Positions 284 to 6,236 of a stretch of 6,236 nt of DNA are shown here, one piece after another; position 1 is the first letter of the stretch, and each line of letters starts with the position of its first letter. Position numbers and translations under genes: made by a program. Source of the stretch: Octopus sinensis (Eukaryota); contig NW_021829420.1 of assembly GCF_006345805.1 (NCBI RefSeq), positions 1 to 6,236 of the forward strand, given 5' to 3'. A model generated the notes under the pieces. It did not search any database. It was not told where the DNA came from and worked only from the letters and a program-made list of their open reading frames with translations.

Positions 284-617
284 TTCTTTAAGATGATGTT
301 TCTAAAGCAATTTCAAGAATAGCAACATGATGTTTACTGAAAATGTGACTCAATCCTAAAAGTAGAGTCGGACACACAGAGTTCGTTTTGACAGGGTTTT
401 TAAGCTTGATGGTTTTTTTTCATTCCACCAATTCTAGTTAAAGAAGCCATCAAGCAAGATTTCTTATATAAAGAATCGTTATATATGTGTTTATGTATCA
501 ATATAAAGAGAAATGCCTGTATAAACATGAGGAGGAAAAAAATCCACAGTGATTAACCCTTTCATTACTGTATTTATTTTGAGATGCTCTGTGTTTCTTT
601 CAATTAATTTTAAATCC

Positions 618-1546: not shown

Positions 1547-1624
<78 letters not shown>
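1513..1624. repeat. Imperfect (TA)n microsatellite
   Basis: Direct reading. Confidence 0.95.
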
Positions 1625-1625
1625 A

Positions 1626-1852
1626 GGCCGCGAGCTGGCAGAAACGTTAGCATGTCGGTCGAAATACTTAGTTGTATTTCAGCTGCCATTACGTTCTGAG
1701 TTCAAATTCTGCCGAGGTCAACTTTGCCTTTCATCCTTTTGGGGTCGATAAATTAAGTACTAGTTACACACTGGGTTCGATGTAACCGACTTAAGCTCTT
1801 TGTCTGTCCTTGTTTGTCCCCTCTATGTTTAGCCCCTCATGGGCAATAAAGA

Positions 1853-1856
<4 letters not shown>
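1626..1856 (+). mobile_element. Apparently full-length tRNA-derived SINE with Deu/Nin-like central domain
   Basis: GG start, A-box-like TGGCAGAAACG (1636-1646) and B-box-like GAGTTCAAATTCT (1698-1710). Then GTCAACTTTGCCTTTCATCCTTTTGGGGTCGATAAATTAAGTAC, which resembles the Deu/Nin domain as I recall it. Ends in AATAAAGAAATA, with (TA)n on both sides. Confidence 0.75.
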
Positions 1857-2207: not shown

Positions 2208-2330
2208 AACATGGCACACGGGGATAATTACTTATTCAATAATTTCTTAACTTCACCCTAGCTGCATGCAGTCAAACCTTTTACCGGAACAAGTCAAGGA
2301 GCATAATAGATAAAATTTCATCTTTTTACA

Positions 2331-2444
2331 TATGCGTGTACGTGTGTGTGTATGCGTATGCGTATCTGTGTGTACGCCTGTGTGTATGTGTGTGTGTGTA
2401 TGTGTGTGTGTATGCGTGTGTGTATGTGGTAATGTATGTGTGTG
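2331..2444. repeat. (GT)n/(GTAT)n microsatellite
   Basis: Direct reading. Confidence 0.9.
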
Positions 2445-2549
2445 TCTTACTAGTCATATTGATCATGGTGGTTGTAGTGGTGGTGGTGGTTTTTCAGAGT
2501 TGAATTTGGTTCTGATGGCTTCCTTTTTACTTCTCTTTTACGTAAGAAA

Positions 2550-2550
2550 T

Positions 2551-2587
<37 letters not shown>

Positions 2588-2628
2588 AACTACAACTACT
2601 ACTACCACCACCACCACCACCACTACTA
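2550..2628. repeat. Compound (CTA)n(CCA)n microsatellite
   Basis: Direct reading. Confidence 0.95.
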
Positions 2629-2679
2629 TACTGGTTTTGATTCTTTGGTTGCTCATAAGGGTGGCATCTTTATTTGAAT

Positions 2680-3025
2680 GTGTGTATACATGCATGTACA
2701 TATGTATGTATGTATGTATGTGTGTATATATGTATGTAGGTATGTATGCATTTGTGTGTGTATATAAGTATGTATATATGCTATATAAGTATGTATATAT
2801 GCTATATATGTATGCACATATGTATGTATGCATATATGTCTATCTATGTATGTATGTATGTGTGTATGTGTGTACATATGTATGTAGGTATGTATGCATT
2901 TGTGTGTGTATATAAGTATGTATATATGTTATATATGTATGTACATATGTATGTATGTATGTATGCATACATGTGTATGTATGTATGTATGTATGTGTGT
3001 ATGTATGTGTGTGTAGTTATGTATG
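2680..3025. repeat. (GTAT)n-based satellite with a higher-order 148-bp duplication
   Basis: 2728-2780 is identical to 2876-2928. A 21-bp unit TATATAAGTATGTATATATGC is doubled at 2761-2802. Confidence 0.85.
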
Positions 3026-3040
3026 TGCCTTGCTGTGCAG

Positions 3041-3210
3041 CCAAAGAGATTGCAGAAGTGCGAAAAAAGATCTCCCGCTATCCTCTACCGAGGAAACGCC
3101 AAAGCTTAAAACCTGTTGATGAAATGCGATCCCGCAGAGACTTTCACAGCCAATTAACAACTGATTCAGCAACACAAACAAACAGGAAAATGGTTCTAGA
3201 GAATCAATGA
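3041..3210 (+). other. Candidate coding exon of an unknown gene (unverified)
   Basis: A non-repetitive island after TGCTGTGCAG. Frame KEIAEVRKKISRYPLPRKRQSLKPVDEMRSRRDFHSQLTTDSATQTNRKMVLENQ* with TGA at 3208-3210 and AATAAA at 3284-3289. No family recognised, and the polypyrimidine tract is weak. Confidence 0.2.
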
Positions 3211-3596: not shown

Positions 3597-3790
3597 CCAG
3601 TGGTGGTGGTCGTGGTTGTGATGATGGTGTTGGGGGAGCAGTGGTGGTGACGACGGTGGTGATTTTGGTGATGGTGGGGTTTGTCTTTGTCGTCATCATT
3701 GATAATCATTGTGATGGTGGTGGTGGTGCTGATGATGATGATGGTGCTGGTGCTGGTGCTGGTGGTGCTGGTGGCAGTGGTGGTCATCAT
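3597..3790. repeat. Cryptic trinucleotide repeat (GGT/GAT/GCT)
   Basis: Direct reading. Confidence 0.85.
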
Positions 3791-3913
3791 CTCCATTGGA
3801 CGAGAAGGTCGAGGCAGAAGAGAAGGAAAGAAAGAATCGGAGAAAACAAGAAACCAAACCAAACCAGAGAAGGTAAAGAGATCCTCTCTCGAAACCACAT
3901 CAATTGGTGATTC

Positions 3914-3953
3914 AAAGAAAGAAAGAAAGAAAGAAAGAAAGAAACGAAGAAAC

Positions 3954-3994
<41 letters not shown>

Positions 3995-4102
3995 AAAAGA
4001 AAGAAAGGAAGGAAGGAAGGAAGGAAGAAGGAAGGAAGGAAGGAAGAAAGAAAGAAGAAGGAAGGAAGAAAGAAAGAAAGGAAGGAAGGAAGGAAGGAAG
4101 AA

Positions 4103-4135
<33 letters not shown>

Positions 4136-4177
4136 AGAAGAAGGAAGGAAAGAAAGAAGGAAGAAAGAAAGAAAGAA

Positions 4178-4245
<68 letters not shown>

Positions 4246-4249
4246 AAAA
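3914..4249. repeat. (AAAG)n/(AAGG)n polypurine microsatellite
   Basis: Only two pyrimidines (3945, 3953). 3954-4249 is purine-only. Confidence 0.97.
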
Positions 4250-4865
4250 TAATAAAGTTCATATTTTCTTCAGTTATAAAAAAAAATAATCATGAAGCTT
4301 TAGAAATGAGACAAATGTTCTCCACATGACCACCAAAACTGGTAGAAATAGAAGCCAAACCACCTTTAATTGACACTGAGTAGTTATAAATAAGGAAAGG
4401 ACACATTAAGTAATGTATTTCTTAGATATACTGTGGTACATACTGACAACAGAATATACTAAGAGATATACTAACAACCGCAAGATATACAGGCAGCGTC
4501 TTTCACCAGAAAGCTGATTCGTTACTGAAACTGGCCAATGGCAAACCTGTTTGGGATCAAGCATGGAAGAGGACCAAAGAAGAATTAATGAGGGTGCCTC
4601 AGAGTGTGACTCACACAGAAGAAATCTCTCTATGGGTCATAGTGCTAGTATATTTATCTAGATAAATATTTCAATCACCTGAAGATTGACTGTAACTCGA
4701 ACTTTTACGAATTGGACAGCCATGAAACGATCGTAGTGTTATACTCATTATCTTTTTTTAATAATTTTGATATATATTTAAAATAATATAAATTAATTAA
4801 TCTTATGTATTGGCTTAAGTTTTTCATTGTATGATTTGCCTAATAGTGGTTTTATCTCTAATTTA

Positions 4866-4912: not shown

Positions 4913-4979
4913 GTAGGTCCCGGGTTGAGTCGGGTTAACCACAGTAAATAAGGTACTCAATACATTGCAGAGTAAAGTA

Positions 4980-5037
4980 ATTTATTTTATAGAAGGAGCT
5001 TCTACAGGACTGTAGAAGCTCCTTCTATAAAATAAAT
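4980..5037. repeat. Perfect inverted repeat, 28-bp arms with a 2-nt spacer
   Basis: ATTTATTTTATAGAAGGAGCTTCTACAG (4980-5007), GA, CTGTAGAAGCTCCTTCTATAAAATAAAT (5010-5037). The arms are exact reverse complements. Confidence 0.97.
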
Positions 5038-5066
5038 ATATATATGTATCATTTATTCAGAGTCAG

Positions 5067-5109
5067 AAGGATAGCACCTACTACATGACTTGATAGCTAA
5101 AAGCTACCT
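5067..5109 (+). repeat. Left arm of long-range inverted repeat (partner 6194-6236)
   Basis: AAGGATAGCACCTACTACATGACTTGATAGCTAAAAGCTACCT matches the reverse complement of 6194-6236 at 41/43 positions. Confidence 0.95.
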
Positions 5110-5280
5110 GTATGTAGAGGCTTGTTCTAGTGAGAGGAGATTCACATGGACGGACATTTGATCACTAGAAATAGCAGCTGAATCTTCATTATTTTACAAA
5201 TAGAACTTATTGCATCATTGAATTCCTGTACAATCTGATTCTTAAAAAGAAGACAGAAAGTAAACAACAACAACAACATA

Positions 5281-5399
5281 GACACAGGTGTGGGTGGGTG
5301 GGTGAACTTATGTTCAGTCTTGCTTCACCTTGGGCAAGTATCTTCTTCTCTAACCCCAGGCTGACCAGAGCCTTGTGAATGGATGCTTGTCATGTATGT

Positions 5400-5430
<31 letters not shown>

Positions 5431-5682
5431 CATGCATGCATGTATGTATACATATATGAGTATGTGTATGTCTTTCTGTTTTCTGTTTTATTCCCCATCA
5501 TTGTTTGACAATCGGTGTTGGTTTGTTTACATTCCTGTAACTTAGTGGTTTGGCAAAAGAAACTGATAGTGTTAGAGGCAAGTTTAAAAGGTTATATAAG
5601 TCCCAGTATCGATTTGCTTGATTAAATCGCTCAGGATGGTGCTCCAGTATGGCCAAAGTCCAATGACTAAAACAAGTAAAAG
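5281..5682 (+). mobile_element. CORE-type tRNA-derived SINE with an internal (GT)n tract and a partly deleted head (octopus OR-like family, from memory)
   Basis: Remnant B-box GTTCAGTC, then CACCTTGGGCAAGT (CORE hallmark, as in MIR). Internal microsatellite at about 5394-5470. The 3' part ends ATGACTAAAACAAGTAAAAG. Confidence 0.65.
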
Positions 5683-5768
5683 GTGAAAAAAGGAAAGGTA
5701 TTTTCATGGGTGGGGGCCAGCTTGATGAGATCTAATCTGGAGGAAAAACCATGATAAGACTTTAAGTA

Positions 5769-5943
5769 ATCATCATCATCATCATCATCATCGTTTAACA
5801 TCCGTTCTCCATGCTAGCATGGGTTGGACGGTTCGACCGGGGATCTGGTAAGCCCGAAGGCTGCACCAGGCTCCAGTCTTATCTGGCAATGTTTCTACAG
5901 CTGGATGCCCTTCCTAACGCCAACCACTCCGTGAGTGTAATGG
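5769..5943 (-). mobile_element. (GAT)n-tailed retroposon, copy 3, 5'-truncated just before the tandem sub-repeats
   Basis: (ATC)n at 5769-5792, then colinear with 641-790 of copy 1. Confidence 0.88.
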
Positions 5944-6120
5944 AAAGAAGAAAAAAAAATGAAAATTCTGTGAAGTTTTTAAATAATTAGGAAATAAAAA
6001 TTGAAGGTTGAGTTAGTACAGGTGAAGCACTACCTCAGGCAGATCAACAGGTGACAACAACAGTACCATCCATCACTAATATGTATGCCTTATGTGTGTT
6101 TGACATAATCCATTGATCAG

Positions 6121-6187
6121 TGAAGCATTGCTTCCTTGCCCTAAGGGGTCTTTGACAGGGTACCTTCTGTTGGCAGCCTTTGGAATG
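6121..6187 (+). other. Candidate 67-nt internal exon (unverified)
   Basis: Acceptor GATCAG at 6115-6120 and consensus donor ATG|GTGAGT at 6187/6188. One open frame, EALLPCPKGSLTGYLLLAAFGM, ends on a codon boundary. An alternative acceptor TTTGACAG ends at 6158. Confidence 0.3.
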
Positions 6188-6193
6188 GTGAGT

Positions 6194-6236
6194 AGATAGC
6201 TTTTAGCTATCAAGTCTTGTAGTAGGTGCTATCCTT
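6194..6236 (-). repeat. Right arm of long-range inverted repeat, truncated by the window end
   Basis: The reverse complement AAGGATAGCACCTACTACAAGACTTGATAGCTAAAAGCTATCT matches 5067-5109 with 2 mismatches. Confidence 0.95.

What the first reader, a model, noticed from the sequence alone, without database searches (positions are those of the whole stretch)
5067..6236. Long-range inverted repeat (at least 43 bp, 41/43) spanning 1.08 kb and running off the window
Seen: 5067-5109 is the reverse complement of 6194-6236, and neither arm belongs to the SINEs identified here. In a plus-strand transcript the duplex has one U-U (5086/6217) and one C-A mismatch (5107/6196). Each arm also contains its own mini-hairpin (GATAGCT-ttt-AGCTATC at 6195-6211), a competing fold. 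Known: A-C mismatches in long duplexes are favoured ADAR sites (though a 5' G neighbour, as here, is disfavoured), and coleoid cephalopods edit RNA extensively. Inference: either (a) an intronic RNA pairing element, (b) TIRs of a DNA transposon of at least 1.17 kb that later acquired two SINEs, or (c) two opposed copies of a dispersed repeat.
Basis: partly seen in the sequence, partly recalled or inferred. Interest (0 to 1): 0.75.

Follow-up and report, generated by a model that had tools for sequence, protein, structure and literature searches.

The report
Transposon-type inverted repeat in octopus DNA
The 43-base inverted repeat is real, but it is one of very many such repeat-derived pairs in octopus genomes, is most likely the two ends of a small mobile element (or two facing repeat copies), and shows no sign of a dedicated RNA function.

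Summary
Observation confirmed. 5067-5109 is the reverse complement of 6194-6236 (41/43; mismatches at 5086/6217 and 5107/6196), far beyond chance, and the right arm is cut by the window end. The SINEs in the window match Octopus vulgaris copies, so the DNA is octopod.

The arms match none of the abundant SINE families. They have no other copy in the window or in 122 kb of O. vulgaris DNA. The pairing stops sharply at 5109/6194.

Between the arms lie an old SINE (5312-5697, at least 10-16% non-CpG divergence), a young truncated SINE (5769-5943, about 5%) and about 0.5 kb of unique sequence. The arms differ by only 2/43, so they are younger than the old SINE (P about 5e-5 to 5e-3). "A transposon that later acquired both SINEs" therefore does not hold as written.

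Such pairs are common: 18 in 128 kb of Octopus DNA here, and 0.44% of loci in O. bimaculoides by a published count whose criterion this pair just meets.

Best reading (about 0.5): terminal inverted repeats of a non-autonomous DNA transposon already carrying the old SINE. Main rival (about 0.27): two facing copies of a young repeat. If co-transcribed, the arms would pair (about -68 kcal/mol) and be a generic ADAR substrate. Transcription, editing and conservation could not be tested. Low interest.

The parts
5067..5109 (.). Left arm of the inverted repeat (43 nt seen; it may extend outward into 5051-5066)
6194..6236 (.). Right arm of the inverted repeat, cut by the end of the window
5092..5108 (.). 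Mini-palindrome inside the left arm (GATAGCT-AAA-AGCTACC), with one A.C mismatch caused by 5107C. It lies 1-2 nt from the inner end of the repeat.
   Evidence: sequence read directly; arm alone folds at -6.8 kcal/mol
6195..6211 (.). Mini-palindrome inside the right arm (GATAGCT-TTT-AGCTATC), perfect 7-bp stem
   Evidence: sequence read directly; arm alone folds at about -10 kcal/mol
5110..5311 (.). Interior segment with no repeat match (202 bp); no protein-family hit in its ORFs
5312..5697 (+). Old copy of an abundant Octopus SINE ('SINE A') with an internal GT/GCAT microsatellite (5385-5460). Non-CpG divergence from the O. vulgaris consensus is 16.5%, and 43% of CpG-site positions are changed. 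The strand is the orientation of my alignment, not a shown direction of transcription.
5698..5768 (.). Short interior spacer between the two SINEs, with no repeat match
5769..5943 (+). Young truncated copy of a second abundant Octopus SINE ('SINE B'). It has (CAT)n at one end, stops sharply at 5943, and is 4.8-5.1% diverged from the consensus. The strand is the orientation of my alignment, not a shown direction of transcription.
   Evidence: (D10, D12, D16)
5944..6193 (.). Interior segment with no repeat match (250 bp); no protein-family hit in its ORFs
5051..5066 (.). Possible outward continuation of the left arm (ATTTATTCAGAGTCAG). CAGAG at 5058 fits the hAT end motif YARNG, but that is about 20% likely by chance. 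Untestable because the partner lies beyond 6236.
   Evidence: sequence read directly; inference only

Best explanation
The two arms are the terminal inverted repeats of one non-autonomous cut-and-paste (class II) DNA transposon. It is at least 1.17 kb long as it now stands and about 0.6 kb without the nested SINEs. The element encodes nothing and would have been moved by a transposase made elsewhere, which binds the matching ends. The old SINE A copy was already part of the element's interior when it last transposed, because ends are kept intact by the need to be recognised while interiors decay freely. The young SINE B may have inserted afterwards. The pair has no host function. If one RNA spans the locus, the arms will form a 43-bp, nearly perfect duplex of the kind ADAR edits promiscuously. 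Shown: the repeat, its sharp inner edges, its absence from the abundant SINE families, the relative ages, and the pairing energy. Inferred: that the arms are true element termini, the transposase dependence, any transcription and any editing.
For: Real repeat, two copies only, with a sharp inner boundary. The arms are unrelated to the SINE families, which occur 15-42 times in the same sample, and have 0 copies in 122 kb of O. vulgaris. Two independent insertions of a low-copy family within 1.1 kb are a priori unlikely, whereas a TIR element gives a pair by construction. Without the SINEs the spacing is about 510 bp, which is MITE-sized. Low-copy inverted pairs of this type are frequent in Octopus DNA: 4 others in 122 kb. 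O. vulgaris carries 238 recently active TIR families, including unclassified TIR elements and MITEs (PMC13282606). The interior ORFs have no Pfam match, consistent with a non-autonomous element. The arms are younger than SINE A and compatible in age with SINE B, as expected if the ends stayed functional longer than the interior. The 7-bp palindrome in both arms is about 1% likely by chance, so it is a feature of the repeat itself.
Against: No target-site duplication can be checked and the outer ends are unseen. No second copy of the family was found, although the sample is only 0.004% of a genome and may be from another species. No terminal motif of a named superfamily is established. The age gap between SINE A and the arms requires the extra assumption that the SINE was carried inside the element. 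At least one low-copy pair in the sample (L003 12406-14564) is clearly two facing tRNA-type SINE copies, so low copy number in a small sample does not prove a TIR origin.
Confidence: 0.5

Rival explanations
1. The arms belong to two separate, oppositely oriented copies of one young dispersed repeat (a LINE or SINE end, or a Helitron-like end). They inserted independently on either side of older DNA, and each ends at the family's natural terminus, facing inward.
For: It explains directly why the arms are younger than the enclosed SINE A. Both copies stop at the same repeat position, as expected for a true terminus. A small hairpin 1-2 nt from that terminus resembles the 3' stem-loops of 'stringent' LINE/SINE tails (my own knowledge, not tested). 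Most inverted pairs in the Octopus sample (12-13 of 18) are made this way by SINEs, and one low-copy pair is two facing tRNA-type SINEs. PMC5625713 states that most such structures come from neighbouring inverted repeats.
Against: The arms match none of the abundant families and are absent from 122 kb. For a family that sparse, two independent hits within 1.1 kb are improbable. There is no poly(A) or microsatellite tail at either inner end. The Helitron ends (5' TC, 3' CTRR) are not present.
Confidence: 0.27
2. A local inverted duplication not made by a transposon, for example a template switch during replication or break repair that copied 43 or more bases in reverse about 1 kb away.
For: Only two copies are known. 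The arms are young. A perfect 28-bp-arm palindrome lies 30 nt from the left arm, which could hint at a local history of fold-back repair.
Against: Such events are far rarer than transposon insertions in a genome that is about 66% repeats (PMC13282606). Perfect palindromes also occur elsewhere in the sample. Nothing links the palindrome to the arms.
Confidence: 0.1
3. A selected RNA pairing element: the two arms pair in a transcript to direct ADAR editing, splicing or circularisation, or RNA localisation.
For: The duplex is predicted in the MFE and centroid structures. Pair probabilities are about 1 on either strand, and the duplex energy is -67.5 / -71.2 kcal/mol. It meets the published criterion for dsRNA-forming loci that are enriched in editing.
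Against: Any 43-bp inverted repeat would score the same. About 0.4% of octopus loci qualify, and 18 pairs occur in 128 kb. There is no Rfam family and no exon or coding homology between or beside the arms. The arms are young and their two differences are not compensatory. The interior is SINEs. Transcription is unknown.
Confidence: 0.03

Closest known systems
MITEs and other non-autonomous TIR DNA transposons (hAT, Tc1/mariner, Mutator, Merlin and unclassified TIR families annotated in Octopus vulgaris, PMC13282606)
   Same: Two near-identical inverted ends. A non-coding interior of about 0.5 kb once nested SINEs are removed. Low copy number in the sample. Ends better preserved than the interior.
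   Different: No target-site duplication, terminal motif or sister copies could be examined. Arms of at least 43 bp are longer than typical hAT or piggyBac ends. The interior contains an older SINE.
Inverted pairs of interspersed repeats that form dsRNA and are hyper-edited by ADAR (inverted Alu pairs in primates; repeat-derived dsRNA in Octopus bimaculoides, PMC5625713 and PMC9989829)
   Same: It meets the published operational criterion (>95% identity over >=40 bp, reverse-oriented, within 2 kb). The predicted duplex is stable. It lies in a SINE-rich, non-coding context.
   Different: The arms are not members of the abundant SINE families that make most such pairs. At 43 bp the duplex is short compared with SINE pairs of 150-400 bp in the same sample. 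Editing and transcription are untested.
3' stem-loop tails of 'stringent' LINE/SINE partners (CR1/L2-type)
   Same: A small hairpin within 1-2 nt of the point where the repeat ends, in both copies.
   Different: No terminal microsatellite or A-rich tail. No LINE coding remnant next to the left arm. The resemblance is recalled, not tested.

Membership tests
Class II TIR transposon / MITE | Inverted repeats located at the two termini of the element | tested here: inconclusive
   The inverted repeat is present, but the outer ends are not visible because the right arm runs off the window.
Class II TIR transposon / MITE | Target-site duplication flanking both ends | not testable with these tools
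   The right flank lies beyond base 6236. No collection available here holds the source genome.
Class II TIR transposon / MITE | Multiple genomic copies sharing the same ends | tested here: inconclusive
   There are 0 further copies in the window and 0 in 122 kb of O. vulgaris. The sample can only exclude families of roughly 60,000 copies or more.
Class II TIR transposon / MITE | Transposase gene (autonomous element) | tested here: not met
   The interior ORFs have no Pfam match and the interior is SINEs plus about 0.5 kb of non-coding DNA. At best the element is non-autonomous.
Opposed copies of an abundant SINE (Alu-pair type) | Each arm aligns to a recognised interspersed family present in many copies | tested here: not met
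   The arms match none of the three SINE families that occur 15-42 times in the sample.
Helitron end | 5' TC or 3' CTRR terminus with a subterminal hairpin | tested here: not met
   A hairpin is present, but the homology ends in ...GCTAYCT. Neither CTRR nor a 5' TC is present.
ADAR hyper-editing substrate | Reverse-oriented match of >95% over >=40 bp within 2 kb (criterion of PMC5625713) | tested here: met
   43 bp, 95.3% identity, 1084 nt apart; duplex energy -67.5 kcal/mol.
ADAR hyper-editing substrate | Both arms lie on one transcript and show A-to-G clusters in RNA | not testable with these tools
   No RNA-seq data or genome annotation for the locus are available.
Conserved structured RNA | Match to a curated RNA family, or covariation across species | tested here: not met
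   Rfam gives only sub-threshold miRNA-like hits on microsatellites and none on the arms. No orthologues could be fetched for a covariation test. The two arm differences are non-compensatory.

The most novel reading that the evidence does not exclude
The pair is a young, lineage-specific dsRNA element inside a transcribed region (an intron or a long 3' UTR of a neural gene). It would be heavily edited by octopus ADAR and would affect the fate of that transcript (retention, stability or circularisation). That would make it a transposon-born regulatory duplex rather than neutral debris.
Probability: 0.04. Interest if true: 0.4.

Novelty: new member of a known kind. Interest (0 to 1): 0.12.

Why it matters
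It matters little by itself. It is one example of the very abundant repeat-derived inverted pairs that give octopus genomes their unusually high potential to form dsRNA, and so contribute to their very high non-coding A-to-I editing load. One method from this work can be reused.

Tried and rejected
1. I searched for the arm in metagenome, prokaryote-genome and viral collections and found nothing. The very abundant SINE used as a positive control was also absent. These collections therefore hold no octopus DNA, and the negatives say nothing.

2. I looked up three window ORFs by exact product to find the source contig. None is on record.

3. A protein search with a possible terminal exon (3040-3207) found no homologue and no Pfam match. 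The gene context stays unknown.

4. An apparent similarity between 4950-5005 and L003 735-790 scored 67 against a shuffle mean of 56.8 +/- 6.4 (maximum 74). I rejected it as chance.

5. Weak blast hits to the arm flanks in L002 (19-38 nt, E 0.01-0.06) cross the repeat boundary, so I treated them as chance.

6. I looked for target-site duplications around the low-copy inverted pairs in the sample. None was obvious at the BLAST-defined ends.

7. A Helitron reading is rejected on the end motifs. A tRNA-like reading of 4916-4945 is not supported by ARAGORN.

8. The database holds only annotated Octopus proteins, not ORFs from raw assemblies (one search returned 7 hits for a SINE with more than 10^5 genomic copies). 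A 14-residue arm translation had almost no chance of a meaningful hit.

Full report
**Observation.** The window reads as AT-rich, microsatellite- and SINE-laden animal DNA. The repeat finder reports arms 5067-5109 and 6194-6236, 43 nt, 95% complementary, 1084 nt apart. A base-by-base comparison gives 41/43, with mismatches at 5086(T)/6217(T) and 5107(C)/6196(A). A search allowing three mismatches finds exactly these two copies on opposite strands, and none of 200 dinucleotide shuffles gives a match. blastn gives E about 5e-12. The similarity stops abruptly on the inner side: the sequences beyond 5109 and before 6194 are unrelated. The right arm ends at the last base of the window, so 43 nt is a minimum.

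**Source organism.** A translated SINE copy from the window hits only 'hypothetical' proteins of Octopus vulgaris (GCA_951406725.2) plus one ENA contig. Six 20-kb O. vulgaris loci fetched through those proteins contain dozens of copies of the window's SINEs at 80-95% identity. The window is therefore octopod DNA, from O. vulgaris or a fairly close relative. The metagenome, prokaryote and viral collections contain neither the arm nor the SINE used as a positive control, so those negatives are uninformative. Exact look-ups of window ORFs did not find the source contig.

**Anatomy between the arms.** Mapping the sample copies onto the window gives these segments:
- 5110-5311, unique.
- 5312-5697, one copy of an abundant SINE with an internal GT-type microsatellite ('SINE A').
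- 5698-5768, unique.
- 5769-5943, a truncated copy of a second abundant SINE ('SINE B'), with (CAT)n at one end and a sharp stop at 5943.
- 5944-6193, unique.

Without the SINEs the arms would be about 510 bp apart. ORFs in the unique parts have no Pfam match. Rfam gives only sub-threshold miRNA-like hits on microsatellites and on a nearby palindrome, and nothing on the arms. There are no tRNA genes.

**Copy number.** The three SINE families reach depths of 15-42 in the sample. The arms and the unique interior segments have no copy in 122 kb. This only excludes a family as abundant as the major SINEs (roughly 60,000 copies or more), and the species may differ. It does show that the pair is not the usual 'two SINEs facing each other'.

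**Relative ages.** I built consensus sequences from the O. vulgaris copies.
- The window's SINE B copy differs from its consensus at 5.1% of non-CpG positions.
- The SINE A copy differs at 16.5% of non-CpG positions and 43% of CpG-site positions, with many indels.
- Part of the SINE A difference is subfamily structure: one old sample copy shares 18 of the 48 substitutions counted over its 3' part (5461-5692).
- I therefore also took half the non-CpG distance to the closest old copies as a conservative estimate. This still gives about 10-13%.

The arms contain no CpG and differ at 2 of 43 positions. If they had been in place as long as SINE A, 8.5-12.6 differences would be expected. P(<=2) is 5e-3 under the most conservative estimate and 5e-5 under the direct one. 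With SINE B as the yardstick, 4.3 differences are expected and P is 0.19, which is compatible. So the arm pair was established, or was last kept intact, well after SINE A arose.

Caveats on this test:
- The arms are short.
- It assumes a neutral clock.
- The consensus comes from another assembly.
- Gene conversion between the arms is not excluded.

**Base rate.** A self-comparison of the six loci plus the window (128 kb) finds 18 inverted pairs of >=40 bp and >=90% identity within 2 kb, and 7 of them are at >=95%. Twelve or thirteen are made by the abundant SINEs. Five, including this one, have arms present only 2-4 times in the sample. Of the four others, one (L003 12406-14564) is two facing tRNA-type SINEs, and the others look like small fold-back or MITE-like units with 57-145-bp arms and 76-311-bp spacers. 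The sample is biased, because its loci were chosen through SINE-derived ORFs. It nevertheless agrees in order of magnitude with Porath et al. 2017 (PMC5625713). They found that 0.44% of random 50-bp loci in O. bimaculoides have a reverse-oriented match of >95% over >=40 bp within 2 kb, an exceptionally high value among 19 species, and that such loci are enriched in hyper-editing. The present pair (43 bp, 95.3%, 1.08 kb) just meets that criterion. O. vulgaris is about 66% repeats and has 238 recently active TIR families, including unclassified TIR elements and MITEs (PMC13282606).

**RNA pairing.** Folding 5037-6236 as RNA puts the long-range helix in both the MFE and the centroid structure. 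Pair probabilities are about 1 for nearly all 43 positions on either strand. The duplex energy is -67.5 kcal/mol for a plus-strand RNA and -71.2 for a minus-strand RNA, where the C.A mismatch becomes a G.U pair. The arms alone fold at only -6.8 to -10.3 kcal/mol. The mini-hairpins are therefore not serious competitors. This shows only what is true of any 43-bp inverted repeat. Nothing indicates that the region is intronic, or transcribed at all. A possible terminal exon at 3040-3207, followed by AATAAA at about 3286, has no homologue. If that exon were real, the transcript would probably end about 1.8 kb upstream of the left arm.

**Interpretation.** The arms are a real, young inverted duplication of a sequence that is not one of the abundant SINEs. 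In a genome with this repeat load, a transposon origin is by far the likeliest, and I put it at about 0.77 in total.

Within that I favour terminal inverted repeats of one non-autonomous DNA transposon (0.5). A sparse family gives a close inverted pair by construction only if the pair is one element. The SINE-free size is MITE-like, and ends better preserved than the interior are what selection for mobility produces.

Two independently inserted, facing copies of a young repeat (0.27) explain the age order without that assumption. They also fit the shared terminus with its small hairpin. But they need a coincidence of position for a family not seen elsewhere in the sample.

A non-transposon inverted duplication gets 0.1. 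A selected RNA element gets 0.03. The remaining 0.1 is left unassigned.

**Function.** The most likely 'mechanism' is neutral. If the locus is co-transcribed, the duplex would be a generic ADAR substrate like the roughly 0.4% of octopus loci that share this property.

**Verdict.** This is an ordinary member of a known, very common class, of low interest. The decisive tests need the source genome and RNA-seq, which were not available here: sequence to the right of 6236, genome-wide copies of the arm, the orthologous empty site, and A-to-G reads.

Noticed in passing
window 4980-5037: A perfect 58-nt palindrome (28-bp arms, 2-nt spacer) lies 30 nt upstream of the left arm. As RNA it folds at -38.9 kcal/mol, z = -10.2. 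Rfam gives only sub-threshold miRNA-like hits (MIR5649, 36.8 bits against a gathering score of 100). It has no copy in 122 kb of O. vulgaris. Comparable perfect palindromes occur elsewhere in the sample (L005 7016-7114, 45-bp arms; L001 16016-16059). Its origin is unknown; it could be a tiny fold-back element or part of the same repeat as the arm.
   Followed up: partly
window 3040-3207 (+): An exon-like open frame follows a ...ctgtgcag acceptor-like site: AKEIAEVRKKISRYPLPRKRQSLKPVDEMRSRRDFHSQLTTDSATQTNRKMVLENQ, then a stop, with AATAAA about 80 nt downstream. It has no homologue in the 5.8-billion-protein search and no Pfam match, so it may be spurious or an unannotated lineage-specific terminal exon.
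   Followed up: partly
window 553-615 and 933-1087: A further interspersed repeat is split by the SINE B copy at 620-933. In O. vulgaris the two halves lie nearly adjacent (L001 15477-15538 and 15562-15713). This is a clean nested-insertion example.
   Followed up: partly
L003 3682-4496 (O. vulgaris OX597840.1): A 137-bp fragment of SINE B is amplified into a tandem array of 5.9 copies at 97% identity. This is a SINE-derived minisatellite.
   Followed up: partly
window 3897-4250, 2326-3030, 3600-3790: Very long compound microsatellites: (GAAA/GGAA)n of about 350 bp, (TGTA/TG)n blocks of about 700 bp, and (GGT/GCT)n. They produce long spurious ORFs and the sub-threshold miRNA hits in Rfam.
   Followed up: no
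window 1623-1856: A third abundant Octopus SINE family, with multiple copies in L001 and L002, some arranged as close inverted pairs (L002 4447-4717 and 18858-19286). These are the commonest source of dsRNA-forming pairs in the sample.
   Followed up: partly
L001-L006 (GCA_951406725.2 annotation): The O. vulgaris annotation calls SINE-derived single-exon ORFs of 103-137 aa as 'hypothetical predicted proteins' (P0001-P0005, P0007). These are almost certainly not genes.
   Followed up: no
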